A DNA stretch of 64,000 bases from Saccostrea cucullata (Eukaryota): NCBI RefSeq assembly GCF_032062105.1, contig NW_026939106.1, positions 62,001 to 126,000 on the forward strand, written 5' to 3'. The notes below the pieces were generated by a model. That model saw only the letters and a list, made by a program, of their open reading frames with translations. It ran no database searches and had not been told where the DNA came from. Positions 447 to 35,126 of this stretch are shown here, piece after piece (position 1 is the stretch's first letter; every line of letters begins with the position of its first letter). Position numbers and translations under genes: made by a program.

Positions 447-544
447 TATGACTATAACTTTCCTGCGCCAAAGCAGAGATACGACTTTACTCAATGAAAA
501 ACCTATGGCTTTGCTTGACTGACTACACCGGTGTTGTTTGTCTA

Positions 545-586
545 AACCGGAAGACCGGGTTCTGAGTTGTAGCAATTTGATTGGTT
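545..586 (-). promoter_or_regulatory. Putative PPIB promoter elements (ETS-type CCGGAAG, CCAAT box)
   Basis: CCGGAAG at 547-553 and ATTGG (CCAAT on minus) at 580-584, ~100-140 bp upstream of the ATG. Motif match only. Confidence 0.45.
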
Positions 587-1301
587 GTTATTGACTCCTA
601 TGGAAAGCCAGTGGGTATTTTATGAAATACTAGTTAATCGGTAAATTCAAGATATTAAAGCACTACTCTTGTTTAAAAATAAACACTTTTTGTTTTCTGT
701 CTGCTCCTACTCCATTTTTTGAAATTAAGACGATTTGTTATATTTAAAAATCGAAAAGTATCTCCTAATAAAGGGGCATTACTCTGTTATTCTTAATCAA
801 AACTGTACAGTGAGCATTATACATATCGAACATTTTTGCAAGCTCAAACAACCCGAAATTATTTCATCCTTAAAAGACATATCTTCTTGTTGGGTCGTCT
901 TTGTATTGTACGTCATTTGTAAACTTGAACATTTTCATTTTTTTATGTCTCTTGATAGGCCAGCAGACAACATTTCAAACTATTTCTGATACTTGCAACG
1001 TCTATGCCGTCTACTGATTTTTATTAGAAAATGAGACTAATTTTCAAATAGAAATCAATAAACGACAAATATAAAACATCAACGACATACTTATGAGTAA
1101 AAAAGTGAATTCAATTCTGCTTTCTACTCCCCCTAGGCTCCTAGAACTCTCTTCCCAAAGGGGTCTAAACCATCAAATTCAATGTAATTTTCAAAAATAA
1201 ATCTCAAGTTAACAAATCACATCAGGGGTTAATTGATTTGCATGATTATAAAGAACAATTACCCTGTAATAAAATAAAAACTTAATAAATATGTTGTCTG
1301 G

Positions 1302-1407
1302 TTGCTACAGAATTGTAGCTCTCTGCCTGAAATATTAGGACATATAAAGCTTTTAATAACTGTCCAAATTTTCTCAAGTAGAGAGCGGGGCTACAGCTCT
1401 GCAGTTA
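1302..1407. mobile_element. 106-bp MITE, family A (TAGCTGCAGAAC termini, degraded), AcademH-like
   Basis: ~40-bp imperfect TIRs; exact 9-bp TSD GTTGTCTGG at 1293-1301 and 1408-1416. Confidence 0.8.
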
Positions 1408-1424
1408 GTTGTCTGGATCTTTGG

Positions 1425-2134
1425 CATCTTCGCTAGCCAAGGGTTTCCGATCCGATACCTACTCTTCAACCCTTGGCAGATTTAGCTGAAAATTTTAGAA
1501 CTCGCGCAAACGAATTTGATTGGCTGCGAAGTCCGAGTCTACGCAAGGTTTTTACTAATCGACGATTTTCGGCTGAATTAAAGTCTGTTCGTGTTTTATG
1601 CAAAATAAGAGTAATATTTACAAGGGATGAAAGTTAGGACGTGATATATGCTTAAAAAACAAGGGATTAATTAATTTGAATTTTTTTCTTTTAATTATAT
1701 ATGTTTTCAAGAATTATTGAAAGGACCACATAAGTCCGTGTTCCGCATTTTAGGTGCGTCAATTTAAGCCAATCAAATGTCACGGCTCATTGATAATAAT
1801 TGATACCGCAACAAGTAGAAAGTGGGGTCAAACTCTTGACTAAAAATCCACGACGAACAATATTTTCTACAACTTTTGAGGTGTGCCCACTGCCCACAGC
1901 TGTGTGAAGTTGTTTGGATATATTCCACATCAAATTGCATGGAGGTCGCCATATTGTTTTAAACGTCATATTGATCTACGTATGTTACAGCTATTTTCAT
2001 TGGACAGATATTAAAGAGCTTCAAGGGACTTAACTCATTTACGGCGATAGGCGGCGCAATCAAAGTTCCCGTTTGATAGATGCCAAGGGTTGTAGAGTAG
2101 ATTTCGGATCGGAAACCCTTGGCTAGCGAAGATG
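1425..2134. mobile_element. 710-bp non-autonomous DNA transposon, family B (CATCTTCGCTAGCCAAGGG termini), AcademH-like
   Basis: ~54-bp TIRs; exact 9-bp TSD GATCTTTGG at 1416-1424 and 2135-2143. YR..YR termini plus a 9-bp TSD fit AcademH better than Mutator; the superfamily call is inference. Confidence 0.9.
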
Positions 2135-2299
2135 GATCTTTGGTTCAGTCCTCGAGCTGGGACTGGTAATATTTTTTGTCACCTAACCGGTAAGGGTATG
2201 CAAAAGTAGACATGATCTCTCAAAACAATCACACCAGACACACAGAACATACCCCCTGCGATGCGAACGTGATTGATTTTGGCAATGCAGCATTGTTGG

Positions 2300-2832
2300 T
2301 AGCTGCAGAACTGTAGCTCTCCGAAAAATATATATTGACAGACCGGAGAGCTACAGTGCCACCCATTGAAAAAACTGTATACTTATTGCGCACAAAAAAG
2401 TGCGCTGTTTCCCGATTTACTTCTCCATGTTTTTAAAACTGTCCCTTTGCTTACCGTATGTTCCTAACATATTCTTTGATTGCTTCCACAACAAAACATT
2501 CATTGTAATTGTTGTTAAAGGCCCTTCTGGGCCTGAAATTGAGATCATCGAAAATTTCGTCCATTTACTCTGCCATTTTGGTTTGAACGGTAATTCGGTA
2601 CAGCACGCTCCGTGCAGATGTCGACTACGAGAAAACTTGATAAAGGGGGTAAGGAATATACCGTATTGAAATTCAGCTTTTTTCGCTATTGAGGTAAGGA
2701 TTTGGAAGAATTGATCCAGAACCAAGCGAAACTTTTTGTGCTCAATAAATATACAGTTTTTTTCAATGGGTGGCACTGTAGCTCTCCGGTCTGTCACTAT
2801 AAATTTTTCGGAGAGCTACAGTTCTGCAGCTA
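2300..2832. mobile_element. 533-bp non-autonomous DNA transposon, family A, AcademH-like
   Basis: ~100-bp TIRs beginning TAGCTGCAGAACTGTAGCTCTCCG; exact 9-bp TSD CATTGTTGG at 2291-2299 and 2833-2841. Confidence 0.9.
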
Positions 2833-2849
2833 CATTGTTGGTCAATTGT

Positions 2850-2921
2850 CATCTTCTCAATGCCTGGGGTCCCGCGTCAACATGTTGCCGTTTGACTCGG
2901 GACCCCTGGCTTGCGAGGATG
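2850..2921. mobile_element. 72-bp hairpin mini-element with family B-like termini
   Basis: CATCTTCTCAATGCCTGGGGTCCCG...CGGGACCCCTGGCTTGCGAGGATG; TSD GTCAATTGT/GCCAATTGT (8 of 9 match). Confidence 0.75.
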
Positions 2922-3892
2922 GCCAATTGTATGAGTGTAACATCTGAAACATGCTTATGTCGCTTATCCAAAAAGAGAGAATCCCTTGCTTCTGGTCCTA
3001 GGGTGGGACATAGTTGATCATATACTAAAGATTAAAAAAATCTTTTGCAATATTTGAAGATTAAACAGACAGTCTATTTGCATCTTTTGTAAGCACTTAA
3101 CTGTGTTTTTGAATGGTAAATAAAGATTTTATAATCAATTCTTAATGACTTGAAATTGCTATTCACGTTATTTTCAAATGATGTTTTAAAACAAAAATTC
3201 CTTGAAAAAAATTCCATAAATTTTTATGAAACATTATTCGAATTGAAAATCTAAATTTTGAATTCCTCGCGTAAATTAAAATCTCTTCTTCACTTGACTA
3301 CGGAATATAGAATTTAAGACAAGTAATCTATTACAAATAAGAAGTGTAACTCGGTGATTTATTGCATTTTTATAACACAGGTGTTAAAATCGTTATGGGA
3401 AAGCAAATTTTATAAGGAAAAGTGATAATCAACAATCTGAAAATGAGCTGTAATAAATTCTAGAACTTGGCAGACAAGATACTCAATTTATGTAATAGTT
3501 TTATCTTTTCCAGACGCATGAACTTGAGTATTTTGATTTTATCAATCACGGTGTGAAATTCTGATAAACTCTCCTTGCAGGTTTATATCATACAGGATAA
3601 AGATCTGATAACCGAGCTTCAAGGAATTAAAACCCTTTGTTTGATACTATTGTGCATTAGACCTCTGTGTTTGATTCTCTTGTGCATTCATTTGTTAAAC
3701 ATGAAACATTTACGAGTCATTGTATTATTTCGCCATAAAGTATATTCTTATAAAATGATGCCCATCATGGATATTTCTGGCGTGTTTTCTTTGAAGGGGA
3801 AATTCCATTAGCATTGCAGTGACCGAAGAGTTCCAAATTGTCCGTTTCTTCAAAGTGGGTTAATAATTCGCAAAAGATGTTTAACCCTGACG

Positions 3893-3965
3893 TAGCTGCA
3901 GAACTGTGACTCTCTGCTTGAGAAAATTCGGACAGATAAAGCAGAGAGCTACAGTTCTGCAGCTT
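3893..3965. mobile_element. 73-bp hairpin mini-element, family A
   Basis: TAGCTGCAGAACTGTGACTCTCTGCTT...AAGCAGAGAGCTACAGTTCTGCAGCTT; exact 9-bp TSD ACCCTGACG at 3884-3892 and 3966-3974. Confidence 0.88.
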
Positions 3966-4542
3966 ACCCTGACGGACTTATAACTCCGCACAAGAAAATA
4001 GGTCATTTTAATAACGATGATATAATCTTGCAATTTTCTGCATATCACTACATCTGTATTTCACAACTGCGTTTGCAAAACAGGCATGTGAGAAATGAAA
4101 AATTAAATATACAAGTAGTACATGAACTTGTGGAAGAAAAATAAATTATTCTCGGCCAAATACAAAGCAACTGTCATGCAGTACATGTACATAGTCATTT
4201 GGTATATATGTCTTTAAGAAGCATAAGAGCATGTGTTCGTAAGATATTTCACTTAAATGAAAGAAATATTTAATTAAAATTAATTTTAAAGATGCTACAA
4301 AGAAATTACTGAATTCCTCTATTTTTGAAAAGCGGACAGAATGTTACGACATCTTCAGTGAAGATGCAAAATAAAGGAACTTCTTCCAAGAGAGCTTTTC
4401 ATTATATTGAATAAGTTAAACTTAAAAGATATCCGATATCCATTACGTAGCACAATTTTTTCCCCCATGAATTGAGATTTCGTGCGGTAATTTCGTGAAG
4501 CTCGACAGATAACTCTCAGGAAGTGGACTTTGATTGACTTTG

Positions 4543-4594
<52 letters not shown>

Positions 4595-4634
4595 TGTTGT
4601 CTGTCGTTCTTGTCGTAGTCGTCGTCGTCGTTGT

Positions 4635-4665
<31 letters not shown>

Positions 4666-4706
4666 AAGAACCACAGGGCCAAATTCAACCAAACTTGGCA
4701 CAAGGT

Positions 4707-4775
<69 letters not shown>

Positions 4776-5843
4776 ATGAATTAGAGAAAAATGAATGGCA
4801 TTTTAAAAAAATCTTCTTCTCAATAACCACTGGGCCAGGGAAGATGAAACTCATGTGGAATCATCCTCAGGTAGTGTAGATTCAAGTTTATTAAAATCAT
4901 GACCCCCGGGGGTAGGGTGGGGCCAAAATGGCCGATCATAATTTTACATAGGAATATATAGGAAAAATCTTTAAAAATCTTCTTCTCAAGAACCACTGGG
5001 CCAGGAAAGATGAAACTCATGTGGAATCATCCTCAGGTAGTGTAGATTCAAGTTTGTTAAAATCATGACCCCCGGGAGAGCGTGGGGCCAAAATGGCCGA
5101 TCAAAGTTTTACATAGGAATATATACAAAAAATCTTAAGAAATCTTCTTCTCAAGAACCATTCAGACAGGAAAGATAAAACTCATGTGAAATCATTCTCA
5201 GGTAGTGTAGATTCAATTTTTTTTTTATTATGACCCCCAGGGGTAGGGTGGGGCCAAAATGGCTGATCAAAGTTTTACATAGGAATATATTGGGAAAATC
5301 TTTAAAAATCTTCTTCTCAAGAACTATTGGGCCAGGAAAGATGAAACTCATGTGGAATCATCCTCAGGTAGTGTAGATTCAAGTTTGTTCATATCATGCC
5401 CCTGGCGGTAGGGTGGGGCCAAAGTGATCGATCAAAGTTTTACCTAGGAATATATAGGAAAAATCTTTAAAAATCTTCTTCTCAAGAAGTGATTGAGACA
5501 GGAAAGATAAAACTCATGTGAAATCATTCTCAGGTAGTGTAAATTCAAATTTGTTCAAATCATGACCCCCGGGGAAGGTAGGGGCCAAAATGGTAGATCA
5601 AAGTTTTTCACAAGAATATATAGGGAAATCTTTTAAAATCTTCTCAAGTACTTCAAAGCCATAATTAGTGATATTTATATGAAATCATCCTCAGGTAGTG
5701 TAGATTCTAGTTTGTTCAAATCATGACCCCCTGGGGGGTTAAAATTTAAGCCCCCCTCCAAACTCAGTAAACTTTCATTTCTGATATTTGCTTTTTCCTA
5801 GCCGGTGTGCTCAGGTGAGCGCTGTGGCCCCTGGGCCTCTTTT
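4543..5843 (+). mobile_element. Non-autonomous Helentron (HINE/pearl-type) carrying a ~166-bp satellite array
   Basis: 5' subTIR AGCTCACCTGAGC plus hairpin, (GTC)n microsatellite, tandem units, 3' subTIR GCTCAGGTGAGC and terminal hairpin GGCCCCTGGGCC; T-rich flanks. Confidence 0.85.
4817..5740 (+). repeat. Tandem ~165-166-bp satellite units (oyster Cg170/HindIII-like)
   Basis: Unit anchor TTCTCAA at 4817, 4983, 5148, 5314, 5479 and 5641. The family name is from recall and was not searched. Confidence 0.85.
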
Positions 5844-7552: not shown

Positions 7553-7996
7553 TAAGATGCGTTTGTGAAACACTGATGCCCCCGTATGTCAGGTTATGGC
7601 TAGGGTTGAAATCTCTCAAATGCATGTCAAACTCTAAAGGTCAAGGTCAAAAGTGTTGGTACCCAAAGGAAGGTCTTGTTACAAGGAATACACCTGTGAA
7701 AAATGAAAGGCCTATTTCTAACTGATCAAAAGTTATGGTCAAGGTTAAAGTTTAAAGTGTGGTATTTTTTAAAAGTAGGTCAAGGTCAAGAAGTCAAATT
7801 TGGTGGTACCCATGGATAGTTCTTTTTAAAAGGAATACACCTGTGAAATATGAAAACCATAGCCCCACCCACTCAATAGTTATGGGCTAGGTTAAAGTTG
7901 ACAACAGACAGACATACAAACAGCTAGACAAACAGACAGACAGACTGAGAGAACAAAAACAATACACACCCGGGATCTTTCAATTCGGGGGCATAA
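7553..7996 (-). mobile_element. Non-autonomous Helentron-like element (ATGCCCCC subTIR type)
   Basis: ATGCCCCCG near 7577 and GGGGGCATAA at the right end, (GACA)n tract, internal AGGTCAAGGTCA repeat units. Confidence 0.7.
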
Positions 7997-9530: not shown

Positions 9531-10123
9531 TTATGCCCCCCTTCGAAAATGGAAGTCTTAAACACATTGTCTGTCGGTCGGTCGGTCTGTCGGTCCATAA
9601 TAAGTTTCCGTTTATTTTCTTTGAAGAGGTTGCTCATATTGAAAGGAAATTTGGTATATGGATTTATCATAAACATATCTAGGTTAAGTTCTGTTTTGTT
9701 TACGATCGAGTCATTTTGGACAGAGTTATGTCCCTTGGACTTATAAAAATTCCAATTATTTGCAGTTTCCGATGATTTTCTTTGCAGAGGTAGCACATGA
9801 TGAAATGTACGATAGCTTTATCATATTAAGAATATCTAGGTCAAGTTTTGTTTTGTTAACGATAGAGCCATTTTGGACAGAGTTACATGTATGTCCCTTG
9901 GACTTAGAAAATTTCAAATTATTAGAAGTCTCTATTTATTTCCTTTACAGAGGTTGCACATACTCAAATGAACTTCAGTTTACAGATTTATCAAAAGAAT
10001 ATCGAGGTCGATTATTGTTTTGGATAGGAGTGAGCGATTTTTGACAGAGTTATGTCCCTTGGAACTAAAAAAAAATCCAATTATTTGGGGGAGGGGGCAT
10101 AATTGTTTTACAAACATCTCTTA
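9531..10123 (+). mobile_element. Non-autonomous Helentron-like element with ~3 internal ~160-bp repeats
   Basis: TTATGCCCCC start, (GTCG/GTCT)n tract, three copies of GACAGAGTTA..TGTCCCTTGGA, 3' GGGGGCATAA..ACAAACATCTCTT. Confidence 0.75.
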
Positions 10124-13775: not shown

Positions 13776-14492
13776 AGGTTTCGTCAAATGTAAAAATGTC
13801 CAAAAAATTATTTTCACAATAGCTCCAAAACTATGAGTGGTCAAAACGTTTATAGTTCATAAATATATCATTGATTAATAGATAGAAAGTATCACTTGAT
13901 AACAAACATTTTATAAAAGAAATTTTTTGAGAAAATTTGTATCAGAAAATGTGCATATTTAAAGAAAAATCACCTGCTTTATTCTGTCCTTTTTGTGAAA
14001 ACCATCAATGCAGAAATATTTAAATATATGTTTATCATTTAAGGGCAAGTTGGACGTGAATGGTCTCTGAAAGGCTGTTTTTGAAAGCATGACATGTATG
14101 TATAAAGACAAGACCCCTATAGAATCCGCCATTTGCAATTTACTTTCACTTTCAAGTCTTAACATTTGGACAAAATAAACAGGGAAAACAACTTTCCAGA
14201 GGCTGTCCAAGTCCAACTTGCCCTTCATTGATCAACATATTTTGTTTTTGCAATGATGGTTTTCACTTAGAGAACGGAATTGATTAGGTGTATTTTTTGA
14301 AAATATGTGCATTTTAAAGAAGAATTTTTCTCAAATAATATTTTTTCCAAGCATTTTTTTATCAAGTGATACTTTTTATCTGTTAATCAATGAAAAATTT
14401 ATTAACAATAAAAGTTTTAACTTTATACCTCACATAGTTTTGGGGCTATTGTAAAAATAAATTTATGGGCATGATGATCTTTGACGAAACCT
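13776..14492. mobile_element. ~715-bp fold-back element (possibly Kolobok-like)
   Basis: Arms of ~280 bp in inverted orientation (AGGTTTCGTCAA/TTGACGAAACCT, AAGTATCACTTGATAA/TTATCAAGTGATACTT, AAGGGCAAGTTGGAC/GTCCAACTTGCCCTT); TTAA on the left flank only. Confidence 0.7.
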
Positions 14493-18124: not shown

Positions 18125-19394
18125 TGTACCAAAGGGAAGGTTTTGTCACAAGGAATAAAAACCCTATTTTCAATTTTTCACAAATAGGACAAACTCTAAG
18201 GTTATGGTAAAAAAAGACATAATATTGTAGGACGATTTTCTCCTTAGTTTGGACTTTCAGTAGGGCATGGTATTTTCGGCGCTACATGTACGTAATGGCG
18301 AATACTAGTAGATTCTCATTGGTTAAGAAATTAATAACATCAGGAACTTAAAATTGTTGTTAACAACGATGAGACGACTTATGCCCCACCTCTGTGCCGT
18401 GAGAGAACTTTTAATTGGCTATTTACTACACCAGATGACATTCGGCCGCATTTCTATCATATGTATATTTCAACAGTGAAGGGAAGCTGTGTAAATTTCA
18501 GAAGCTAATTGGGTAACGTCGAGAATGCCACTCCTTACTGAAAGTCCAAACTAAGCGTGTAATGGTCCTATTCTTGTGGAAATATACAAGAATATTAATA
18601 CATTTATAATACGAAAGCCCAGACTCCATTGATTTAATTTTTAAAATGTAAAAAAAAAAATTGTAAAGGTTAGTAAAAATCGAAGGTCAAACCACAAAGA
18701 GTACACTTTTAAAGTATGAAAGCGTGGCATCAATCTTTTAAAAGTCAAGGTTGAAGTCTGGTGAAAAATTTGGCAAAAGTGGGTCAAACTCTAAGGAAGT
18801 GGGTCAAGAAAAAGATTTGGTACCTTGAGAAAGTTTTTGCCACAAGGAATACATCTGTAAAATACATACATTGTATAAAATCCATAGCTACAACTATCCA
18901 AAAAGTAATGGCAAAGTTTAAAAATTTTCAATCTCCAAGGTCAAGGTAATAGGAAGTGAATTGTCTCTTCGCGGAACTGTACATGCATATGCATGTGTAA
19001 CACGAAAGCCCTAACTCAACCCATTGTTTGTCAATGTTGAAGTTTTTCAAGCTAGGTAAAAATCGAAGGTCAAAAGATAAAATTTATTTTTACTCAAGGA
19101 AAGGTTTCATCAAAGAATGCACCTAGTATGAAAGCCTGGCATCAGCGTTCGAAAGTTATAGCCAGGTTAAAGTCTGGTAAATTTGGCTAAAAGTGGTTCA
19201 AACTCCAAGGTCAAGGAGAAACGTTGGTACCTTAAGAGAGTTCATGTCATAAGTAATACACCTTAAATAGAAAAGCCAATCATGTAGGTCCAACCAATCA
19301 AAATCTATGGACAAGGTCAATAATCTTTGCGGACAATCAGACTGATGGAAATAGCAAAGACTGTATAACCCCGAATCTTTGATAAGGGGCATAA
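18125..19394 (-). mobile_element. Degraded Helentron-like array related to 7553-7996, interrupted by a MITE
   Basis: Repeated GGTCAAACTC..AAGGTCAAGG / ACAAGGAATAC units and terminal GGGGCATAA; left boundary approximate. Confidence 0.55.
18228..18570. mobile_element. 343-bp MITE, superfamily unresolved
   Basis: ~55-bp imperfect TIRs containing CTTAGTTTGGACTTTCAGTA / TACTGAAAGTCCAAACTAAG; no clean TSD. Confidence 0.75.
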
Positions 19395-21017: not shown

Positions 21018-24000
21018 GTAAGTTTTAATGTAAGATCAGGTTTCTCTAGCAAACAGCTTACATAGCAGTTTTGCAAAATGACCCATTTATAAAATAAAAA
21101 AAAATATTACTAAAAATAATGAAATTTAAAAATTTTGAGCCATTTTCAATACGATTTTTCCCCCAAATATCCTTCACATGCTTTCGAAAAATCCCAATTG
21201 CATGTTTTTCAAAAATTTGAAAACAGTCAGAAATAATAACTTTTAGATCTATTGTATTGCACGCAGAAGCTATTAATATTGAAAGGGAAAAAGTGAATAA
21301 GAAAGCATTTTAAAATATTTGCAGTATAAACCAAATTCTAAAACCCATTCAAGATTCGTTTCTTGTACGCGTAACCTATCATTATCTGTATTGGAAAAGG
21401 GATCGTAAATTAACAAATCTGGAGTGCAATGGCGTGTAATAAATACACATAAATGAAAAAAGTCCTTATACATTCGTTTAAACAAGGTATAGAGAGAATT
21501 ATTATTCAATATTGCCAAAAACCTGGCAACCCCATATGATCTGACCTACTTCAAAAAACTTCCCGTGTCTTTGCACCTTGATAATGTCAGTGGTCACGAC
21601 ACTATGTATATTTTCCAGAGGATTACAAAGTTATCAGATGAGAGTGAAACAACCCATACGTTATACGCTTAATGAATTTTTTTTACCACGAAGACTGGCG
21701 AATGAATGTGTCAAAGATTAAGTCTCCGCTCCAGATTTTTTTGGCAGATCGAAAAAAATTAAAGCTTGTCTAAATGACATTTTGTTTAGATTGATAACCG
21801 TTTTGGATAATCTAGCTTTGGAGTCTAGTCTTGTAAAAATCTTTTATATCTGTTCTCCTCGAATGTTGATGTATGGTGCATCTGACGTTTAGGATCTGAT
21901 CCCTCTCAAGTTGATGAACTTTTGGTCAGAAGGCATCTCTTTGGTCACAGTATTGTGTAATTCTTCCCCAGAGATCACACGCATTCTTCAAAAGCATCTA
22001 CGATTTTATGACAATAGATCGGCATGTGATACTGAAAGACTACACACTTCTAATGAAAAACAGAGCAGTCAAATGTCGCCCAGGTCTTGACGTTTGTTTG
22101 CATCTTTTTACAATTCAATGCCTTATCCATGTCTCTAAGGCCTAATATAAATGAACTTTCTTTGTATACTTCAACCTGCATTACCTTAAGTGTTACATAA
22201 TCACACCTGACAGCTAATTTTGAAGATTCTTTTTTAAAGATAAAAACAACTTCTTTTAAAAGAGATAGCTATATTTTGAAGTGCGTAATCAGTGCAAGGT
22301 GAATAGATATAAATTCATGCTGACATGCAAAACACTTGATCTATTTTAAAACGATATAAACATTAAATGAGAATATTATATTTTGCAGACAGGATAATAT
22401 TTTTACCTACTTATTTTTTTCTTTACAGGTAGTTTTATAAACAAATTGGATAATTATGATATAACCATTCCCGTCCGAGTGACAAGCAGAGGTGACGTCA
22501 TCTCACACGAACTGCACCCTCATAAATTACGTCATCGTAGAAATAGTGACCAAATTTCAGACACGATACATTATAAATTAAATGTGAACAACAGTGATTA
22601 TATACTCAAATTAAAACCAAATGTTAAACTATATAATCCATCATTAGTTATTGAAAGAAAGAAAAATATATTCAAGAATGTTACGGATTCTAGTTTTATG
22701 CGCTATACGAACAACAATCAGCTTCCATGTCATTACACAGGAGAAATTATGGACAAAGAAAACAGCAAAGTTGCACTTGCATTGTGCGACGGTTTGGTAA
22801 GTGGCCTATTTTCTCACGAAATTATGTAACTTTATACACATGCTATAAAAATCGAAAGTTTAGCAATACATTTATTACATCTATTCACGACATCCGGAAT
22901 AAGTTCCTAAACCTTTTCGTTTTGCAGCAATGTTGTTTATCAGTGTATTTATATCAGTATGAAGTCATCATTTAAAATATGATTGTTGTAGACATAAAGA
23001 GGTGATTAACGGGGGCTGTATTTGTTTCTGTAAACATAATTATTATCGTCAGTGAGCGAGTAAAACTTTGTTAACTTGCGCGCGTTACAAACGAAGGTAG
23101 GGAGCCCCTCTTCAAAGATTTCCCCCTTCAACGTTACCGGCGATGATTAGTGTAAGGTTATAGGCAGTAACACTGTTAATTGCTGGTCTTTATCATTGTC
23201 TAGTAAATATTCCCAATCACTGAACGGCTCCGATACCTTTATTTTCTTAGAAATAACAAACAGATGTTGCAAAGAACGAGGTGATCGTACACCAAAGAAG
23301 TTTTGGCATTCAAAAAAGTGGCTACCGTGTGCAAGATGCCAATACCTATTTTTCTTGCACTGTTGATAAATACAGAAGGTTTTTTTTGGTATACCCTTTG
23401 ACGTTTTTTATGATCATGAAATAAACTTTTGTCCCGCGTTTAATCTCTAAGAAACCTTCTCACACAAAACTCTGCTAAAAAGAAAGTTCTGACAAATCGC
23501 CGTGGTTCATTTATTAAATTCTTTTTCAAAATTCTTTTAATTGGGATGAGGATAGGAAAAAATATGTGCTTTGAAGACCAGTTGCTCTCTTTAATCCCAA
23601 ATAAATCACTTTAAAAAAAACTCTAAATAGGTCGCAGTCTGACCTACAGGGTAGAATTTCATGGTGTTTTGTTCCCTGTGTGGCACAAAAAAGAAGATCC
23701 CAGTTTTATTTCATTCATAATTTACCAATCTTTTACATATTTACTGTGAGAACATGTTCGAGGGAATATCGTTTAATTGATCTAAGGACCTACAACAAGA
23801 TCGTGTGTGCAGGATCGTTTACATGCCCATTCATACAGAGACGATATTTTTAAAAGGGGTTCCATTGAAAACTTGTAATCACTACCATACCCTTACAATG
23901 ACACATGTATAATCTTTCGGATCGTATGGACTATAACTAATTACGTCTGGAATACTGGCCATATACCTTACGCTCTCCCGATACAAATTTATGAATGAAT

Positions 24001-27000
24001 TTGAATTGAGAAAAATGCTTCGATTGCTAATATGACCAAAAAGATTCATAATCAGCGATTTATGCATTGTCATATTATGTAATAATACAGGCAGCTTATC
24101 AATATTAATATTTGAAGACGTTTAAAAAGATCGGTATAAAGACACTGTAATACAGTCCACACACAGGTGCACGTGGTATTTGAACATTCAAGGACTATGT
24201 CATAAAAATCACACACACATTCCAATGTAGTATACAGAAGCTATCATATATAAAAATATCGTTGTTAAAAATTACACTTTCATGTTCATAAAAGTGAATT
24301 TGCAACATTGTATACTTGTAAAGGATATCTTGTTGTGACGGCTAACTTGAATATATCTTCCCCACAGCAAAGGTTATGTAGCGCCTGTCCGCATTTACCC
24401 GAAAGTCGATCCCTCTTCTGTGAGAAAAAAAGAATTGTAAAGTTCAAGTGTGACAACACTTCATATTTAGTTTTTAATTTGATAAAAAAACTATTTACCA
24501 ATTTTGCCCTTTGATGTCGTGACTTTAAATTTCTTGTGTAAAGCAACTCTGATTATTCAAATAACACGAAGTTGTGAAGTAGAGGCGTTATATATCGTCT
24601 TGAAAACCATGCCTTGGTTTGCAAATGATTTCCTATGAAGTACTTTTAATAATTGATTCGGCAAACAAAAGCTATCAGTAGTCATACCATATCGGAAACG
24701 GAATGCTAAGATGTTTTGACCACTTGACATATATTTTTCCTGAATTTGGTCTGCTTTTGAAATATAATATGACAGGTTTAATAATGTTCTGATATTTTCA
24801 TGAAGATGTTTTTACCCCCAAGTTTTTCTTCTTCAGTTTTTATTTTTTTTTTCATATACACATAATTTATATTAACAAAGTTAGAAAAGAAAGAGAAGAA
24901 TTAAGAGAAAATTATTGTTTTCCCGCCAGTCTCTCTGTTTTGTTGTTTTGTTGTCCCAGTGTCTGTACAAACAACCTGAACGAACTCTAAACATTGTTGT
25001 AAGGGAAACACGTGTTGTCATAACTCACAAAACGATCTTCCATTTCTCTTGGCATCTCCCGTGTATTATAAAGGTATTAAATGATTTCTATCAGAAAAAT
25101 GTCATTTTTCCCCTTCTTTCTTCTCATTGAAGTTGAAGTGAGGAATGGTATATATATGCCTCATTACACATCTTTGACTTTTAATGGGAGAACTAGGGAG
25201 TCGTCGTTATTTATTTTAAAAATATCACACGTGTACGAAATTAATCACGTGCCATTGATAATCCAATTTTTATAATGTTCCTGTCTGCTTAATCCAGACG
25301 CCCCATATTCACTGTTTTTACGCTTTTTTGCAGCACGGGTTAATTCATACTGGCAATGCAACATATTTTATTGAACCAATGCAGCAACCCAAAAATAATA
25401 CTGGTCATCTTCATGCCATATACCAACATGAACCAAGGACAGAAACTGACCTTGGTCATTCGGATCAAAGAGACACGTGTGGAAACAATGGTACTTGTAC
25501 AACTATTATCTCCAAATCTTTCAAAAAATGTCTTTCTTCCATTTCATTTTTTTGAATTTTGAGAACGTACTCTAAAACCATTATGACTCAGTTACAATAA
25601 TAAATCATAGAATCACTTTGTCAAGAATTTAAAGGCCATGAATAAAAAAATGAAGGGTTTTCATTGTTGTTTAGTATCAGCTTTTATAAAATGAAATCTG
25701 GCACATTCTTGTTTTCGTTCGTGCAAATTAGGCAATTAATTTTATGAACAACATGACTCCATTTTTGAAGATTAGACGATAAATTTTCCAAAAATGGCGA
25801 ATCTTTTCATTTGCGATAAATGTCCCTGATAAATAAAATCCGAAAATGAAATAGTAGTGAAAATGTCTGATAATGCTAATCTGTATTAAGAAAGAGAAAA
25901 AAATTAGAATCCAATATTTTGCAAGAAATAAAAACAGAGAAAGCAAACAAACAAAGGGAAAGATGGGAAGCTCATCATCAGCGGAAAAACGGACGAAACA
26001 GCAGACGACATAAACGATCTATCTCTGTGGAGCATCACGTGGAGACTTTAGTGGTTGTGGACCCGGATATGACGGAATATTACAAAAATGAAGACGTCAC
26101 AACTTACGTCCTTACCATTATGAACATGGTACGTTAGTAATCTAATGCATGCTTTATATAGTTTTATAATGGTGTATAAGGGGTAATCCAAATGGAGTAC
26201 TATACCTCACCCCAACCATTTAACACAACAACAAGCAACAACAGCAACCAAATTTCAATTAAAGCAACATTCAACAAGAGTTTATAATTGAAAGAAAAAT
26301 TCTGTTATCTTTAAATAATGGGGTGTCTTTTATATCGCTCTAGGTTTCTCAACTGTTTCACGATGCTTCACTTGGGAATGCCGTCAACATAGTGGTTGTC
26401 CGCATCATTTTACTGGAGGATCAACAGGTACACAGCCAAAACATATACTTACAATGTTCAGACGAATGTGTCTGGTACTGAATGTCAAACTAACAGGCCT
26501 TTTTATCTGTTTATCGTAAATGACCATTTTAAAATTCCAGAAATTGTGCATATATGTCACTTTTATTTGCTTGAGGTTTAATACCACAAAAAAGTTTTGC
26601 TCATTAAGGTCCAAATTATACTTTTTGTGTTCACGAAAATGGTTTAATGCTGTTATCATAAAGTTAACAAGTAATTTGAATTTAGGAAGGCCTTATAATA
26701 ACACATCATGCAGACAAATCGCTACGGAGTTTTTGCAAATGGCAGACAAAGATTAACATGAAAGAGGAGGACCATCCCAACCATCATGATGTGGCCATAC
26801 TTCTGACAAGGTCTTTAATTTTATAAAATTAAACAATGAATTATAAAAATCATAATAGAGCAAAATAAAGTAAAACAAGACTTATTGAGGAATCATAAAT
26901 GGTACGAATATGGATTAAAAACGATATTCTGGTTGCAGGAAAAATATCTGTGCTCGGATGAACAGGCCGTGTAACACACTAGGATTGGCTCAGACTTCCG

Positions 27001-30000
27001 GCATGTGTCAGCCACACCGTAGCTGCAGTATTAACGAGGACACGGGACTCTCTTTGGCCTACACAGTTGCTCATGAGCTAGGGCACAAGTAGGTTACACA
27101 AGCCTGGTTAGCAATTTGATGATGATATTTTCTTTTCCAACAATTTTATGCAAGCCTTGCTTTGGCTTAATCTCAAGTACAGCAAAGCAGAGCACGGGAA
27201 GGGCATGTATTTTTTCACGGGAAAGGTTATTAACTAAAGGTTATCGTTGAAGAAAGTACTAAATATTACAGCCAGGAAAGGGCACTGAATATCACTAAAG
27301 AAAGCACAACAAAGCACACTAAAACGTTAATCATAGCACAACACAATAAAATAAAAGTTTAATTTACAGGAGAATAGCAGGAAAGGGTTCTAAATCACAG
27401 TAAAGACAATTTTTTTAATCACAGGGAAGAGCAGTAAAATTTCAGACATGTTTGTTTTGCAGTTTTGGGATGAACCATGACAGTCGTAGGAATGGCTGTA
27501 AAACATCAAGCAAGGACCACTACCTTTACTTGATGCAGAATCAGCTGATGGCGGTCAGTCCATTGATGAAATGGTCAAACTGCAGCAAGCGAGCCATTAC
27601 CGAGTTCATTGAGTAAGTGTCACTGTTTAGGCCAAGTCTTACTAAGCTTTTATATACTGTGTTACAATGCTGTAATTTTTTCATTATCCTGTATCCAAAA
27701 CTACATCCAGATAACCTTCTTTGGTTCCCATGCACTTTACACTCTTATATACATGAAAAAATTATCGGGCAATCTAATGCAATGAAAATAAATATTTTTG
27801 CAATCTTGTGCAAAACATATGCATTTTTTATGTTTATGATCAAGCAGTTGTCTTAGTGCAAACGAACTGATTTCTAAAAATGAGGTTATCATTTTCTTTG
27901 GTACAGTCGAGGGTGGGGCTACTGTTTGGAGGATGAGCCTGCTAAGTACAGGGATACGGAGTACGAGTACCCAGTACTACCACCCGGTACCATGTATGAC
28001 GTCGAACATCAGTGCAGACTCGCTTACGGCCAAAACTCTTCTTTCTGTGGGGAAAAGGTACAAAAATTTCATACTATTCTTTTCCTAATATTTATTACAA
28101 ACTATCCGAAGCAAAACCCATCTCTTACTCCATGGCACCTGATCCCACCTCTGATAATTTTTAGAGGTCCGTTTTCGCTTTGCTCCCAGTTTGTACTACC
28201 CGGTATTTCAATAGCCCTTTGATTTTGAGTTTGTTATCATCATTTCATTTGATGTCTGGCAGATCACTACATGTGATTCAAGTACATCTAATATATACTT
28301 TTTTCCAAACTTCTCGAAGGAGGACATATGCAGCACACTTTGGTGCCGAATGGACAACAAATGTTCTACAAGACTGGAGGCAGCTGCCGAAGGAACAATA
28401 TGTGGACCAAATAAGGTAATGCATACATACAAGTACATTTTTGTCCATGCTAAATACATGTACGTCTGAACTTCGCTATCTCAAACACTGATATTTCGAA
28501 TACGGGTATAATGGATATGCGGCAGTGCTTTGAAAGACCAAACCACTCATTCTTTTACTTTTTTACCCATGATTTCTCGAATACTCGGGCACCTCAAAGT
28601 TTTTTCTCAGTCTTATCGAGTTCGACATAACTAGGTTTGACTGTATTTGAAACAATTGCTACATCTATCCATGGAGATTTAAATATAGTATAAAAAGTAT
28701 TTTTATCAATTTGCAGTGGTGTTTCAATGAACAATGCGTGGAAATCGGCGACAGACCGGAATCTATCAATGGAAATTGGGGCGAGTGGAGTAGCTGGTCC
28801 ACGTGTTCCAGAACCTGCGGTGCCGGAGTTTCTGCGCGGGAACGTCACTGCGATAACCCAAGGTATGTTTTAAACAAAGATCAAAACCTCTCGAAGTTGT
28901 ACTGTGGCTTTTTATTGCATTACATCATCAGATTTGTTTGGGTTAAACGTTGATTGAGTTTATCTGGTATTATTGAACACCTGTTAATGTGAATTCAAGA
29001 TCGTTTTTGCAAGGGATGAAAACTCAGGCACTGAGGGATCAAATGAAGACGGGCTACACTTTGAAAAAAAATTGTAGCGAAAACATTCTGATATATCTTG
29101 CTTTATTTTTCAGACCTGCTAACGGAGGAAAATATTGCATTGGGGAAAGAAAAAGATACAGGATATGCAACACTGAGGTATCGAAAACATCTTAATGCTT
29201 TTTGCTAGCTTCCTCCCGACAAGACGCGGATCTATTTTTCATAATAGCCTTCGATGCATAAAATTTTATCTTTTTGTTTTCTTGGCAATTATTACAATTT
29301 TCCCATTGAGTTGGTGTCCTCTGGCTACATGTAATCAAGACTTAATTAACACAATCTTAAAAACAGCGCGATAATCAGGGGTCGCTGGGCAGACATCTTT
29401 TTGTTGCTGGATATATTTAGTAACATCCATTATGTTTGTCGCGATTCTGCCAAAATCTTTCACCGTTTGAAGTGATTAAGATATTGTACATAAGAAAATC
29501 CGACTTTGATTGAAAACCTTACGCATATTAATGCGAAAATCATGAATAATCTTTCAATATATCTTAAATCAAATTTTATTTACCTTAATATAAATTGGAT
29601 TCAATTTCTTTTTATCAATCTGATAACTTTGCTTTTTCTTGCATTTTAAAGGCATGCCCGGAAAATAGCCTGAGCTTTCAGGAGGTTCAATGTGATGAGT
29701 TCAACTACATACCCTATCAAAATGGGCTTTATGAATGGCAACACGTCCCGACACCAAGTAGGTCTCAGTATTCACATGTTTTCATTTTACAAACATATTT
29801 TTTGATGGATGGGGTCGGTTTGACATTCTAGACGAATTATTATTTTCAGTTCACTTAAAATACATCCCCCGTGGCCAGCAAATAAAACCTTTTGAAAAAA
29901 AAAACTGAACCTTATTCATAAAGCAAATATTTGCATTTTTGATATTTTTACTAACATATGCTTCTTTGGTATTTTGAACTACCTGCGTTAGATTAATTGG

Positions 30001-33000
30001 GGGAGATTAGTTGATACGAACATTTGTCAGAAAGTCAAAGAGTCAAAGAACTCTTAAAATAAAAGTACATTGCTCTTGATGAATTCAAAAGAATTTTCAT
30101 GGACAGAATAAACACTGTATGTTCAAAATGATGTTGCTATCACTAATACTAGTACTTTAAATCGTTATTTTCGTGTATTGATACCTATACATGTAAATTT
30201 TAAATCTTTAAATTTTATTTCAATCAAATCAAGGTATCAAATAAAACCTCCTGGATAAGTCCAATGTATCAAAACTAAAAGATAAGGTCTGAAAAAATAG
30301 TACCATGCAGTTGAGTTGTACATACAGTTCACAATATTCAATTGCCACCTAGGTACATTACCTAAAAAGAGAGATATGCATAATAAAAATTTCAGTAAAT
30401 TTGTTTTCGTTTCTTTTGAGTAAAAACAACATTTTAAATTAGAATGTTAAATTTTTGCGTCTCCCAATTAATTATGTAGCGGAAATGTAAGAGTTCATGT
30501 TTGTAAACAACTTTCAGAGGAAAACCTTGTATTAGAGCTTTAAGGTGACACCCTTTTTATGGAAAACTTAACACGGCATGTGTGATTCTGACATATTTAG
30601 TACTTCAAACTTTTATTGGTCATGAATTAACCTCAGGCCACAAAAAGCCTTTTGCAAGTCCTTACATCTCAAATTGATCTCGTAAATTATATTATAAATG
30701 TCAAAATATACCTCGTTCCTTATCCCGTTAACATGGAATTGCACCTCCTGAGAGTGTACTTTAATAATCCAATGTGTAATCTGTCAAAAAGTTGGCCAGA
30801 TAAATGATATGGTAAATAGACGAAATACCTAATTTTGGTGTGGGATGAATATTCTTGATATTAAGGAATCTGTACATACTGGACACTAAAGAGTTCTAAT
30901 AATTGTAGAGTACTTTCTTGTACAGTTAAAATATAATTAGAGTGATATGCCCTTAGATGTAAGTTGAAAATAAACAAGAACCTTTAGTTAATGACAACTT
31001 TTTACAATAAAATAATATGCCAAAATGGCGGTAATTAATACACCGCTTATGAACTAAATAAAGCAACAAAAATAAAACGAAGTTTTATCTATATAAAATA
31101 AACATTAGTAGTAATGACTTTGGGAATTTGGGAATATAACAGATACTAATATCCATTCTTAGGTTGAAAATGAGATTCAATAACTAATTAAAGTATACTT
31201 TTATTTATGATCTAAAAGTCGAAAACATTTTTCTTTTGTGTTTAGAGCTTCCTTAACCTCCGTTTTTTTAACGAAACAAACATATCTGCATATTTATTAC
31301 CTCTTTCGTTACTCATGCTGCTACGTACAATTTCAGGAACTCCGTGTCAATTGCATTGTAAACCGGAAAACAAGTTTTTCTCTGTCATGATGAAAGACAT
31401 CGTTACTGACGGGACGCCATGTATGGCGGGCACTAGAAACTTATGCATCAGCGGAAGATGTCGGGTATGATTCAGCTTTCAATGATACCTATCCATCAAC
31501 AAAAAAAAAAAATAATGGCCGTTTCGTGCACAAAACACTAGCTAGCAAATAAAAGCCTAGACATTTCAGCATAAGTTGCATTTTGTGCATCAAAGTTTTT
31601 ATATCCTGACATGATAATCAAGGTTTTTATCACTATCTTTTTTTTCAAGTCTTTCTGTTTATTTATAAGCCGTTTGTTGATATCTTTTGCTATCTATTTC
31701 AGCATATTGGATGCGACTGGGGAATAGACTCCACAGCGAAAGAAGATAGATGCGGCGTCTGTCATGGCGACGGATCAACTTGCGAGACGATAAAAGACCA
31801 ATATAATGAAACACAAGGAATGGGTGTGTGGCAATTTTCCGTCTCTTCATGAATAAAAAGCATTGTACTAAAAGATATCCTATCTTTTATATACGTATTA
31901 AATTTGTCATTTAACTTGATCTTTCTTGAAAGAAGAATATTTTATTGAAATTTAATCAGGTTATGTTGAGGCAACTGTAATACCAAAGGATGCTCGTAAC
32001 ATACGTGTGGAGGAGGTTGCTGGAGTAGACAACTATTTGGCTCTTCAGAACGATAAGGGTCAATACTACCTGAATGGTCACTGGTTCATTCAGTGGTCTG
32101 GAGACTATAACATTGCAGGCACAGTTGTGCAATACAATCGTCAGGGTAACAGAGACAAATTTGAAGCTGTTGGACCAATCACAGAACCGCTTCATATCAT
32201 GGTACATGTAGTATAAGATTACAATGTAGTTATCAATAATGTAATCGTGTATTCGAGTAAAAATCTTTGTCATTCGTTCAGTTTCCTGAGTGTTCGCATT
32301 GTATTCAATTTTCCAGCTCTTACTGCAAACACGGAACCCTGGTGTTGTGTTTGAATACACTGTTCCCAAAGAAAATGCTACAGATACTAGACCCCGTGAA
32401 TTCCAGTGGACCTACATGGATTGGACACATTGTACCTCGTCTTGTGGATCAGGTAATTCATAGTTTCTTAATGACTGTATGAATACATTCGCAACTGGGT
32501 TCGATTTACCTTCCTTCTCATTCCATTTGTGTTTGCTAAATTTAGGTACACAGAGAGCTATTGTTGTTTGTTCCGAGAAAGAAGATGGACAAGTTGATGA
32601 TGTTTACTGTAATAAAACACACAAACCTGATGACTTGCAAAGGGTTTGCAACGTCCATCTCTGTCCAGCAAGGTAAATATACAGACAGTTAGAATTATTA
32701 TAACTATAACAATATTTCTGAGATACATTGGAATTTTCTTTCATTTCAAATTTCCGATTTATTTTCTTTCCAGATGGTGGGCAGGGCCTTGGCAACACTG
32801 TTCCGTTACTTGTGGCAAGAATGGCGTCCACAAGAGGACTGTCATATGCGTGCGCAGCTTAGGGAATGAGGAACAGATAGCCCTGGAAGATAAATCATGC
32901 GGTGGAGAAGAAAAGCCAACAGAAGTTGAGGCATGTCACCACAAAGACCTATGTCCAGGCACTGGCGAATGGGAAGTAGGAGAATGGACGCCTGTACGTT

Positions 33001-35126
33001 GTTTTAATTTATAATTTCTTTTGCAATTTGTGTTGGAAGTGAAGTTTAATATACTATTTTTATTGCTATTGTCCTTTTTTCAGTGTGATAGCAATCCATG
33101 TTCATCACAGACTCGAGAAGTTAAATGTTCATTGCCAAGCATTGGTTGCGACAAAACCCCAATTCCAGCTCAAAAACGTCAGTGTTCTGATGTAATTTGT
33201 GAAAAGTGGACATTTGGAAACTGGTCTGAGGTTAGAAATTTTTGAAAGGAAAATATTGTAGAAGACATGAAAATTTCTAATGTATTTTAACCTTTTTCAT
33301 TCATTCCATTCTTTCTTTTTAGTGTTCTGTTACTTGTGGATTTGGGGTTCGCTTGAGGAATGTCACGTGTCCTGAAACTAAAACGTGTGATGCAACACAG
33401 AAGCCAGAAGAATCAGAAGTTTGTGATATTCTGGACTGTCCAACCGCTCCTTCCACAAAAATGGTTATAGATCTTATTGACATTCCAGAGGAATCAGCCG
33501 ATGGTGGATACGAAAGAAAAGAGTTTATTGAAAATGATCGCATTATACAGGGAATATCGACAACGATTTCATCCACCACTGAAGAATCCTCAAAAACATC
33601 TCCAACAACAAAGCTTGATGACGAAAGGGGGGTTATCAAGGGTCCAGTCTTGGTCACTGAGGTAACCGAGCATATTCCTCGCCAGTTTTTGGATATCAAA
33701 GAAGGTGGTTCTGATGTTATCGTTGATAATCAAGATATTCAGCAGCCAACGCCGTCGGTGGACAATCATAAAATTCAGGGTGATAACTTGCTAAGCAAAA
33801 AAGTACCTCCACCAATATCCGATTTTACACAACACAAACAAAGTTTTGGTCAAACAAAAATTGATGGGAGAAAGATACTGCCTCCTAACGTTGATATGGA
33901 TAAAATTGCTAATATTCCACATCTACCAGACATGAAAAAGCTGCGTCCATTACTAAAGCTACCCTCATTGCCAAACATTTCCGGTCATCCAAGGAGACGT
34001 ATTAGTCCCAATACCATCATCATTCCTTCAGTTTTTGAGTGGGTTCCAAAGACGTGGAATCCGGTAGGTTTGACACCCGTGTTTTTTTTTAACTATATCG
34101 CAATTTGCTTTGCAGATCCACACATATTTTAACTTTATAATCATTATTTTTGTACAGTGCTCTCGAAAGTGTGGTGGTGGAATTCAAACACGTGCAATTG
34201 GTTGTGTTGACTCCAAATCAGGTCAGGAAACAGAGGAACATAATTGTAACATACTGACAAAGATGGATACAATTCGTCCCTGTAATACACAACAATGTTC
34301 AACGTGGCAAACGTCCATATGGAGTCAGGTACTTTTTCACCTTCTTGGTTCACTAAAAAATGCCTTGCAAACTTTATTTTTCTTTGCAAATGCCCATTAC
34401 TGAAATTGATATATTTTACAGTGTTCTGCCACCTGTGGAGAAGCGGTTCAAATCCGCGATGTGGTTTGTTCCGAGAATTTGGACTGTGATCCGGACCAGA
34501 AACCAGTAAACATTCAACCCTGTGTACTTCCAAAATGTCTGGCATGGAAACATGGTCCCTGGAATACGGTAAAATTTCCTATCATAGAATTTATTCTGAA
34601 GACGGATTTTTTTACTCTGACGGAATTTTGATTTTCTTGTTGAGTTTGCAAATAAACGCTCTTTTGATTTTGTTAATAATTTGCTGAAAATATAAAATTC
34701 TTTGATTCCTTTTTAGTGCTCTAAAACGTGTGGCAAAGGAGAGCAAATAAGAGCAGTGCAGTGTATAAATATGACATCAGAGACAATAGCCACCGATTGT
34801 GACATGTCGCAAAAACCAGCAGAAGTACAGTCCTGCAATCCAGATGCATGCCCACGTAGACATTCAGGTATAATGAAAATTTTATTATGAAATAGTCTGT
34901 TTTGCTTGTTTTTTCCTCCTTTTATCGATTTTTCAATGACATTCTTTATTTTACAGAGCTAAAAACATCAAGATGTAAAAGAAACAGATTAAACTATAGA
35001 GTTTGTCGTAAATTACGAGAACGAGGCCAATGTGCACGTGTATATGTTAGAGTAAACTGTTGCAGAACGTGTGAAATGAATAGATATCGGACAAGATGGC
35101 GACCTAGAAGAAGACAAGCACGGTAG
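20912..35126 (+). CDS. ADAMTS7/12-like: ADAMTS7/12-like metalloprotease, complete 25-exon gene (~1464-1474 aa)
   Basis: Signal peptide, prodomain, furin site RHKR|SIS, zinc motif HELGHNFGMNHD, disintegrin-like domain, TSR1, Cys-rich, spacer, 4 TSR, mucin-like insert, 3 TSR, PLAC. MNRPCxTLGL, [17 protein letters not shown] and DRGWGxCL match ADAMTS7/12 as I recall them. All 24 introns are GT-AG with compatible phases. Confidence 0.93.
22429..22796 (+). CDS. ADAMTS exon 2 (prodomain)
   Basis: TTTACAG acceptor; [23 protein letters not shown]; donor GTAAGT. Confidence 0.92.
25334..25490 (+). CDS. ADAMTS exon 3 (prodomain)
   Basis: TTGCAG acceptor; [23 protein letters not shown]; phase 1 donor. 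Confidence 0.9.
25938..26128 (+). CDS. ADAMTS exon 4 (furin site, start of catalytic domain); acceptor ambiguous (25908/25926/25938)
   Basis: [31 protein letters not shown]; donor GTACGT. Confidence 0.85.
26344..26427 (+). CDS. ADAMTS exon 5
   Basis: [28 protein letters not shown]. Confidence 0.92.
26686..26810 (+). CDS. ADAMTS exon 6
   Basis: [33 protein letters not shown]. Confidence 0.92.
26939..27088 (+). CDS. ADAMTS exon 7 (HExxH)
   Basis: [49 protein letters not shown]. Confidence 0.95.
27463..27612 (+). CDS. ADAMTS exon 8 (third zinc His, Met-turn)
   Basis: [26 protein letters not shown]. Confidence 0.93.
27907..28057 (+). CDS. ADAMTS exon 9
   Basis: [29 protein letters not shown]. 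Confidence 0.93.
28123..28187 (+). mobile_element. Penelope-like element 3'-end fragment in ADAMTS intron 9
   Basis: GGCACCTGATCCCACCTCTG..GAGGTCCGT is shared with the RT-bearing relic at 52994-53513 and with 50195-50295 and 63258-63330. Confidence 0.55.
28320..28415 (+). CDS. ADAMTS exon 10 (disintegrin-like); tandem AAG/GAG acceptor, may start at 28323
   Basis: [32 protein letters not shown]. Confidence 0.9.
28463..28643. mobile_element. Degraded Tc1/mariner-type MITE in ADAMTS intron 10
   Basis: Right end AGGTTTGACTG|TA, degenerate left end, internal ATxTCGAA repeats. Confidence 0.55.
28717..28862 (+). CDS. ADAMTS exon 11 (central TSR1)
   Basis: [39 protein letters not shown]. Confidence 0.95.
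29114..29177 (+). CDS. ADAMTS exon 12
   Basis: [21 protein letters not shown]. Confidence 0.93.
29652..29757 (+). CDS. ADAMTS exon 13 (Cys-rich)
   Basis: [22 protein letters not shown]. Confidence 0.92.
31337..31464 (+). CDS. ADAMTS exon 14 (Cys-rich)
   Basis: [23 protein letters not shown]. Confidence 0.93.
31703..31823 (+). CDS. ADAMTS exon 15
   Basis: [27 protein letters not shown]. Confidence 0.94.
31960..32201 (+). CDS. ADAMTS exon 16 (spacer)
   Basis: [38 protein letters not shown]. Confidence 0.94.
32317..32452 (+). CDS. ADAMTS exon 17
   Basis: [32 protein letters not shown]. Confidence 0.93.
32546..32672 (+). CDS. ADAMTS exon 18 (TSR2)
   Basis: [29 protein letters not shown]. 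Confidence 0.92.
32774..32993 (+). CDS. ADAMTS exon 19 (TSR3)
   Basis: [22 protein letters not shown]. Confidence 0.93.
33084..33230 (+). CDS. ADAMTS exon 20 (degenerate TSR4)
   Basis: [23 protein letters not shown]. Confidence 0.88.
33323..34063 (+). CDS. ADAMTS exon 21 (TSR5 plus mucin-like insert)
   Basis: [16 protein letters not shown].., ~200-aa Cys-free T/S/P/D/E-rich stretch, [10 protein letters not shown]; 741 bp, phase 0/0. Confidence 0.9.
34158..34328 (+). CDS. ADAMTS exon 22 (TSR6)
   Basis: [24 protein letters not shown]. Confidence 0.92.
34422..34568 (+). CDS. ADAMTS exon 23 (TSR7)
   Basis: [24 protein letters not shown]. Confidence 0.92.
34717..34867 (+). CDS. ADAMTS exon 24 (TSR8)
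   Basis: [23 protein letters not shown]. Confidence 0.92.
34957..35126 (+). CDS. ADAMTS exon 25 (PLAC domain, stop)
   Basis: Six-Cys pattern ending CCRTC; TAG at 35124-35126. Confidence 0.9.

What the first reader, a model, noticed from the sequence alone, without database searches (positions are those of the whole stretch)
1293..2930. Two independent transposon pairs inserted exactly 17 bp apart: possible neighbour-directed ('ruler') targeting
Seen: a family A element (1302-1407) is followed by a family B element (1425-2134), and another A (2300-2832) by another B-like element (2850-2921). Both gaps are exactly 17 bp, made of two 9-bp TSDs overlapping by one G (GTTGTCTG-G-ATCTTTGG; CATTGTTG-G-TCAATTGT). 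The spacers differ in sequence and the elements differ in size (106/533 and 710/72 bp), so the pairs are not one duplicated block. Inference: the end of a resident element, or transposase bound to it, positions the next insertion at a fixed 8-bp offset, building transposon chains across families. Only two cases are visible, and I cannot confirm whether this is already reported for AcademH.
Basis: partly seen in the sequence, partly recalled or inferred. Interest (0 to 1): 0.85.

Follow-up and report, generated by a model that had tools for sequence, protein, structure and literature searches.

The report
Clustered mini-transposons, weak 17-bp spacing
Two families of small non-autonomous DNA transposons pile up at one insertion hotspot; the repeated 17-bp gap is real and occurs once more in the genome, but that is too few to show a spacing rule, and the clear genome-wide peak is the known kind: same-family dimers 9 bp apart.

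Summary
The pairs are not a duplication or a composite. Genome-wide (about 7,400 A ends, 2,200 B ends) I found one more 17-bp pair (C6105). There, about 54 A-only and 2 empty copies of the host repeat show that B came after A. Other A-B gaps are 3, 22, 29 and possibly 6 bp, and B also sits inside A ends. One of 4-5 outside events landing on 17 has P = 0.12-0.15: suggestive only. No A-A or B-B pair lies at 17. The sharp peak is A-A at 9 bp (9 distinct spacers, about 90-fold over local background): shared-TSD dimers, as known for P elements. In the window the order looks opposite (old A/young B, then young A/old B), and all four target sites fall within 181 bp of the reconstructed empty site. 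Best reading: a shared hotspot plus coincidence (0.6); a true cross-family ruler is not excluded (0.22). AcademH membership is untested beyond TSD length. No earlier scan note on 17-bp spacing was returned.

The parts
1293..1301 (.). left TSD copy of A1 (9 bp)
   Evidence: identical to 1408-1416
1302..1407 (.). A1: old 106-bp family A MITE with decayed TIRs
   Evidence: 6/20 TIR mismatches; left half joined to the same flank in another sample (X1 record 2)
1408..1424 (.). first 17-bp spacer: A1 TSD and B1 TSD overlapping at 1416
1425..2134 (.). B1: young 710-bp family B MITE, 54-bp TIR
   Evidence: full-length 90.6% relative at an unrelated locus with no A end nearby (L066)
2135..2143 (.). right TSD copy of B1 (9 bp)
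2144..2290 (.). 147-bp middle segment between the two pairs; 2210-2289 is a fragment of a third, older repeat
   Evidence: 14 other genome matches at 77-97% identity, all starting at query position 67
2291..2299 (.). left TSD copy of A2 (9 bp)
2300..2832 (.). A2: young 533-bp family A MITE, 76-bp TIR 97% complementary
   Evidence: full-length relatives at L037 and L033
2833..2849 (.). second 17-bp spacer: A2 TSD and B2 TSD overlapping at 2841
2850..2921 (.). B2: old 72-bp hairpin-like family B derivative
   Evidence: 7/20 TIR mismatches; joined to the same right flank in X1 and X4
2922..2930 (.). right TSD copy of B2 (1 mismatch)
3893..3965 (.). A3: third family A element (73 bp, exact 9-bp TSD) with no B neighbour; part of the same local cluster

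Best explanation
A and B are two families of non-autonomous cut-and-paste DNA transposons (MITEs), A with 9-bp and B with 8-10-bp TSDs (shown). Four separate insertions hit one small hotspot: removing them leaves all four target sites within 181 bp (shown by reconstruction). The two families co-cluster at short range across the genome and B lands near, across or inside A ends over a broad range of distances (shown; cause inferred: accessible DNA near resident elements, or loose attraction to element ends). Within that broad preference the equal 17-bp gaps are most likely coincidence (inferred). The one sharp distance rule is A next to A at 9 bp, sharing one TSD (shown as a spacing peak; double insertion is inferred).
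For: Independent outward A-B gaps within 30 bp: 17, 17 (window), 17, 22, 29, 3, possibly 6. B inside A at 14 nt (7 copies of one junction) and 21 nt from the end. Four outside events in 0-30 bp vs about 1 expected from the 31-60 and 150-180 bins (P 0.02). P of at least one of 4-5 outside events at 17 = 0.12-0.15. No A-A or B-B at 17 with 3 mismatches allowed. A second tight A-B-A cluster in a host repeat has gaps of 29 and about 68. TIR decay implies opposite order in the two window pairs. MITE multimers and nesting are known (PMC5172404).
Against: Three of 6-7 close A-B pairs share one gap: P 0.02-0.03 before allowing for post hoc selection. The third case was predicted in advance and found; against the distant background its chance is about 0.03. 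In L033 the gap stays 17 although the B TSD is 10 bp, as a ruler measuring to the joint would give. Two of the genome's few close pairs within 1.6 kb needs a strong hotspot whose cause I did not identify.
Confidence: 0.6

Rival explanations
1. Cross-family ruler: protein bound at a resident end, or the incoming transpososome docking on it, places the joint of an element of the other family 17 bp away, in either order, while same-family insertions go to 9 bp.
For: Three independent junctions at 17 with unrelated spacers; gap kept with 9- or 10-bp B TSD; order A then B shown for L033; the A-A peak shows that end-linked insertion exists in family A; Bayes factor about 2-3.6 for a model with 20-40% of close pairs at 17. 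Precedent in bacteria: IS30 and IS911 insert next to their own IRs (PMC9333248).
Against: Only one outside case despite five further A-B searches with relaxed patterns. Must be reciprocal and must work on decayed resident ends (A1 6/20, B2 7/20 mismatches) of an unrelated TIR sequence. No 17 for A-A or B-B. About 54 identical A-end targets in the L033 host took B only once.
Confidence: 0.22
2. Chromatin geometry: after the two old elements (A1, B2) were in place, 17 + 147 + 17 bp lay between them; a nucleosome centred there would leave two 17-bp linkers, and both young elements inserted into the 9 bp touching the core.
For: Exact mirror symmetry of the reconstruction and a 147-bp middle segment. 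Order-independent, so it fits the opposite ages.
Against: Post hoc number. No excess of A-A or A-B end pairs at 150-180 bp (2-3 and 1 outside events, same as at 31-60 bp). Does not explain L033. Part of the segment is itself a repeat fragment.
Confidence: 0.08
3. Helical phasing: insertions near a resident end recur about one turn apart (A-A 9, 19, 20; A-B 6, 17, 29), so 17 is one of several favoured phases.
For: A-A gaps 9, 19, 20; A-B gaps 6, 17, 29.
Against: Gaps 3 and 22 do not fit; very few events; pattern noticed after the fact.
Confidence: 0.08
4. The two pairs are one duplicated block, or A+spacer+B moves as a composite.
For: The pairs lie 1.4 kb apart; A-B junctions can be amplified as passengers (29-bp junction, about 24 copies).
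Against: Each element has its own TSD; spacers, sizes and interiors differ; flanks are unique; each 17-bp junction is single-copy; A-only and empty copies exist for L033.
Confidence: 0.02

Closest known systems
Tandem dimers by double insertion (P element, hobo, R1; McGurk and Barbash 2018, PMC5932611)
   Same: Two elements separated by one TSD-length spacer; formed at strong insertion sites. The A-A 9-bp class has this spacing.
   Different: There the spacer equals one TSD and both partners are one family; the 17-bp pairs are two families with two TSDs overlapping by 1-2 bp. A-A spacers here show no obvious shared motif (by eye), unlike P dimers.
MITE multimers and nested MITEs (Jiang and Wessler 2001 as reviewed in PMC5172404)
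   Same: MITEs inserting into or adjacent to other MITEs, including other families, by independent events.
   Different: No fixed spacing is mentioned in the passages read; other TSD lengths (from memory).
IR-targeted insertion of IS30 and IS911 (PMC9333248)
   Same: Insertion directed next to a resident element's end.
   Different: Bacterial copy-out/paste-in elements, own IRs, spacer of 2 bp for IS30; forms an active IR-IR junction. No evidence of such intermediates here.
AcademH (Kojima 2020, as cited in PMC10045372)
   Same: 9- or 10-bp TSDs.
   Different: No transposase or helicase gene was seen; B also has 8-bp TSDs. The primary paper was not available, so whether it reports adjacent insertions is unknown.
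Mutator-like (MULE) MITEs (from memory)
   Same: Variable 8-10-bp TSDs, as in family B.
   Different: Not tested; no autonomous partner found.

Membership tests
AcademH | 9- or 10-bp TSD | tested here: met
   A: exact 9 bp at A1, A2, A3, L033, L037. B: exact TSDs of 9 bp (3 loci) and 10 bp (2 loci); feature taken from PMC10045372.
AcademH | TSD length restricted to 9-10 bp in family B | tested here: inconclusive
   Two B loci have exact 8-bp TSDs (L055, L071); these may be 9-bp TSDs with a changed edge base.
AcademH | Autonomous partner encoding Academ DDE transposase and helicase with the same termini | not testable with these tools
AcademH | Terminal sequence matching described AcademH families | not tested
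   Primary paper not held; no repeat library available.
Tandem dimer by double insertion (A-A class) | Junction spacer equal to the TSD length | tested here: met
   10 loci, 9 distinct spacers, all 9 bp; background about 0.1 per distance.
Tandem dimer by double insertion (A-A class) | Same 9-mer also on both outer flanks; partners independent | not testable with these tools
   Loci could not be cut out. Mixed end variants at some junctions are compatible with two elements or with one asymmetric element duplicated.
Tandem dimer by double insertion (A-B 17-bp pairs) | Junction spacer equal to one shared TSD | tested here: not met
   Spacer is 17 bp with two different TSDs; no credible A-B junction at 9 or 10 bp.
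Composite transposon (A+spacer+B) | One outer TSD and multiple copies of the same junction | tested here: not met
   Separate TSDs; each 17-bp junction single-copy; A-only copies.
Fixed-offset, end-directed targeting (IS30/IS911-like) | Sharp peak of distance from the resident end | tested here: inconclusive
   A-B: 3 of 6-7 at 17, only 1 outside the discovery window (P 0.12-0.15). Met for A-A at 9.
MULE-type MITE | Mutator-like transposase partner with matching TIR | not tested
   Considered only because of the 8-10-bp TSD range.

The most novel reading that the evidence does not exclude
An animal DNA transposon system in which a resident element's end sets the position of the next insertion, 9 bp away for the same family and 17 bp away for a different family, in either order and without a target sequence motif.
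Probability: 0.2. Interest if true: 0.7.

Novelty: new member of a known kind. Interest (0 to 1): 0.3.

Why it matters
If the 17-bp rule were real it would be a eukaryotic case of cross-family, fixed-offset targeting, which I did not find described in the papers searched, and it would hint at how 9-10-bp-TSD transposases choose targets. As it stands the data add a case of MITE clustering and of shared-TSD dimers. The A-A dimers are the firmer lead: their spacers show no evident motif, so they may form by attraction to the resident end rather than by target-sequence reuse.

Tried and rejected
Loose junction pattern: swamped by an unrelated repeat with an 18-bp gap. Metagenome scan: 27 hits, none with A or B sequence beyond the pattern and none at 17; treated as chance. 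Reads (101 letters): swamped by paralogous copies; no listed contig skipped an element, so no allele order for the window pairs. Loose A-A search listed four 17-bp rows, but its control gave 25 hits against 56, and the strict test with 3 mismatches found none, so they were rejected. Nucleosome-length test: no excess. Idea that A2 and B2 sit in a repeated host: right flank is unique and no empty copy was found. The B-like match at 6175 has 2 mismatches, no partner end, and was treated as chance. AcademH paper and Jiang and Wessler 2001 not held; no paper found on Tn5 spacing. Gap tallies were read from the printed rows by eye.

Full report
Observation. A1 (1302-1407) and A2 (2300-2832) have exact 9-bp TSDs; B1 (1425-2134) has an exact 9-bp TSD and B2 (2850-2921) one with a single mismatch. 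Both A-to-B gaps are 17 bp, and in both the last base of the A TSD is the first base of the B TSD. The pairs are not copies of each other: spacers, sizes and interiors differ, and the outer flanks match nothing else that was searched.

Setting. The window comes from a 1.17-Gb animal assembly; the 165-166-bp tandem repeats at 4.6-5.8 kb resemble oyster Helentron-type arrays (from memory, not tested). Strict end patterns give 6,110 A ends and 1,829 B ends with a non-C anchor base, about 7,400 and 2,200 after correction. A has 9-bp TSDs wherever checked; B has exact TSDs of 8, 9 or 10 bp. At these densities a 3-kb stretch should hold about 0.01 A and 0.003 B elements, yet 1302-3965 holds three A and two B. 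Removing the four elements of the finding leaves their target sites within 181 bp (17 + 147 + 17), and 2210-2289 is a piece of a further repeat. The locus is a hotspot.

Genome-wide test of the 17-bp claim. A-end/B-end patterns with a 0-30-bp gap gave 32 hits: about 24 are copies of one 29-bp junction carried inside a host repeat; the credible independent ones are 17 and 17 (window), 17 (L033, contig C6105) and 22 (L022). L033 is a clean third case: a 564-bp A with a 9-bp TSD and a 545-bp B with a 10-bp TSD, overlapping by two bases. Five more searches that relaxed either end, or fixed the gap at 17 with three mismatches, found no further 17 but added a junction at 3 bp and a possible one at 6 bp. 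B also lies inside A ends, at 14 nt (seven copies of one junction) and 21 nt. Beyond 30 bp there is about one credible A-B pair per 30 bp of distance. So B is enriched close to A ends (four outside events vs about one expected, P 0.02), over a broad range. That some gap occurs three times among 6-7 has P 0.02-0.03, but two of the three are the discovery itself. The fair test is the outside events: at least one of 4-5 at 17 has P 0.12-0.15, a Bayes factor of at most about 3.6 for a ruler.

Order of insertion. The L033 A end and spacer belong to a multicopy host repeat: about 54 copies carry A only, two are empty and one carries A and B. There B came after A, and A+spacer+B is not a mobile unit. 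In the window, TIR decay marks A1 and B2 as old and B1 and A2 as young, and A1 and B2 are joined to the same flanks in a sample that differs by roughly 7-10% in those flanks. The order therefore looks opposite in the two pairs (inferred; no allele lacking an element was seen). A ruler would have to be reciprocal and to read decayed ends of an unrelated sequence.

The real peak. A-A junctions peak sharply at 9 bp: ten loci with nine different spacers, against a local background of about 0.1 per distance, about 90-fold. No A-A or B-B pair lies at 17; the single credible B-B pair is at 11. A spacer of one TSD length is the signature of tandem dimers formed by double insertion, described for P elements and others (PMC5932611). 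I could not check the outer TSDs, so tandem duplication of one element is not excluded. The nine spacers share no obvious motif, which leaves open attraction to the resident end, as for IS30 and IS911 (PMC9333248).

Mechanism. Shown: separate cut-and-paste insertions with their own TSDs; short-range co-clustering of A and B; an A-A peak at one TSD length; order A then B at L033. Inferred: the cluster reflects accessible DNA or a loose attraction to element ends, and equal 17-bp gaps arose by chance within it (0.6). Rivals: a cross-family ruler (0.22); a nucleosome centred between the two old elements, suggested by the 17-147-17 symmetry but with no genome-wide excess at 150-180 bp (0.08); helical phasing (0.08); duplication or composite (0.02).

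Known relatives and membership. The system works like MITE multimers and nested MITEs (PMC5172404) and, for A-A, like double-insertion dimers. TSD length fits AcademH (PMC10045372), but the defining transposase and helicase genes could not be tested and the primary paper was not held; B could equally be Mutator-like (from memory). The 17-bp pairs fail the one-shared-TSD test for classical dimers.

Limits. Patterns miss copies with indels or heavy decay at both ends. Verdict: a real but thin pattern on top of known behaviour; interest 0.3, with a 0.2 chance of a result worth 0.7.

Noticed in passing
G000 contigs C3458, C6806, C9726, C11103, C14247, C17608, C17660, C18554, C19319, C22872: Family A tandem dimers separated by exactly 9 bp, nine different spacers without an obvious motif; about 90-fold over local background.
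   Followed up: partly
L033 (G000:C6105 near 74950) and about 56 other loci: A multicopy host repeat carries a family A passenger; A-only, empty and A+B versions coexist in one assembly, which allows ordering of insertions. The host repeat was not identified.
   Followed up: partly
L006, L032, L034, L049 and about 20 more: Another host repeat carries A (470 bp), B (about 85 bp) and A (about 100 bp), each with its own TSD, gaps 29 and about 68 bp; a row at C416:431949 looks like the version without B.
   Followed up: partly
L063 1458-1529 and six more loci: A small B inserted 14 nt inside an A terminus, same junction at seven loci: probably A still moved with B as passenger.
   Followed up: partly
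window 2210-2289: Fragment of an unidentified older repeat with a sharp left boundary, at least 14 other copies.
   Followed up: partly
window 22398-34129 (+): Exons resembling an ADAMTS-type protease (prodomain-like and thrombospondin-like stretches, by eye).
   Followed up: no
window 36489-36896 (-): Stop-free stretch resembling an OHCU decarboxylase (by eye).
   Followed up: no
window 4540-5840, 7580-7900, 9540-10100: Elements with 147-167-bp internal tandem repeats, resembling Helentron-type arrays.
   Followed up: no
window 13776-14492, 18228-18570, 38873-41207, 39724-40549: Further long inverted-repeat elements; 39724-40549 lies nested inside 38873-41207.
   Followed up: no
window 530-610: Short stretch with ETS-like and CCAAT-like motifs that could be a promoter about 700 bp from the cluster; not tested.
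   Followed up: no
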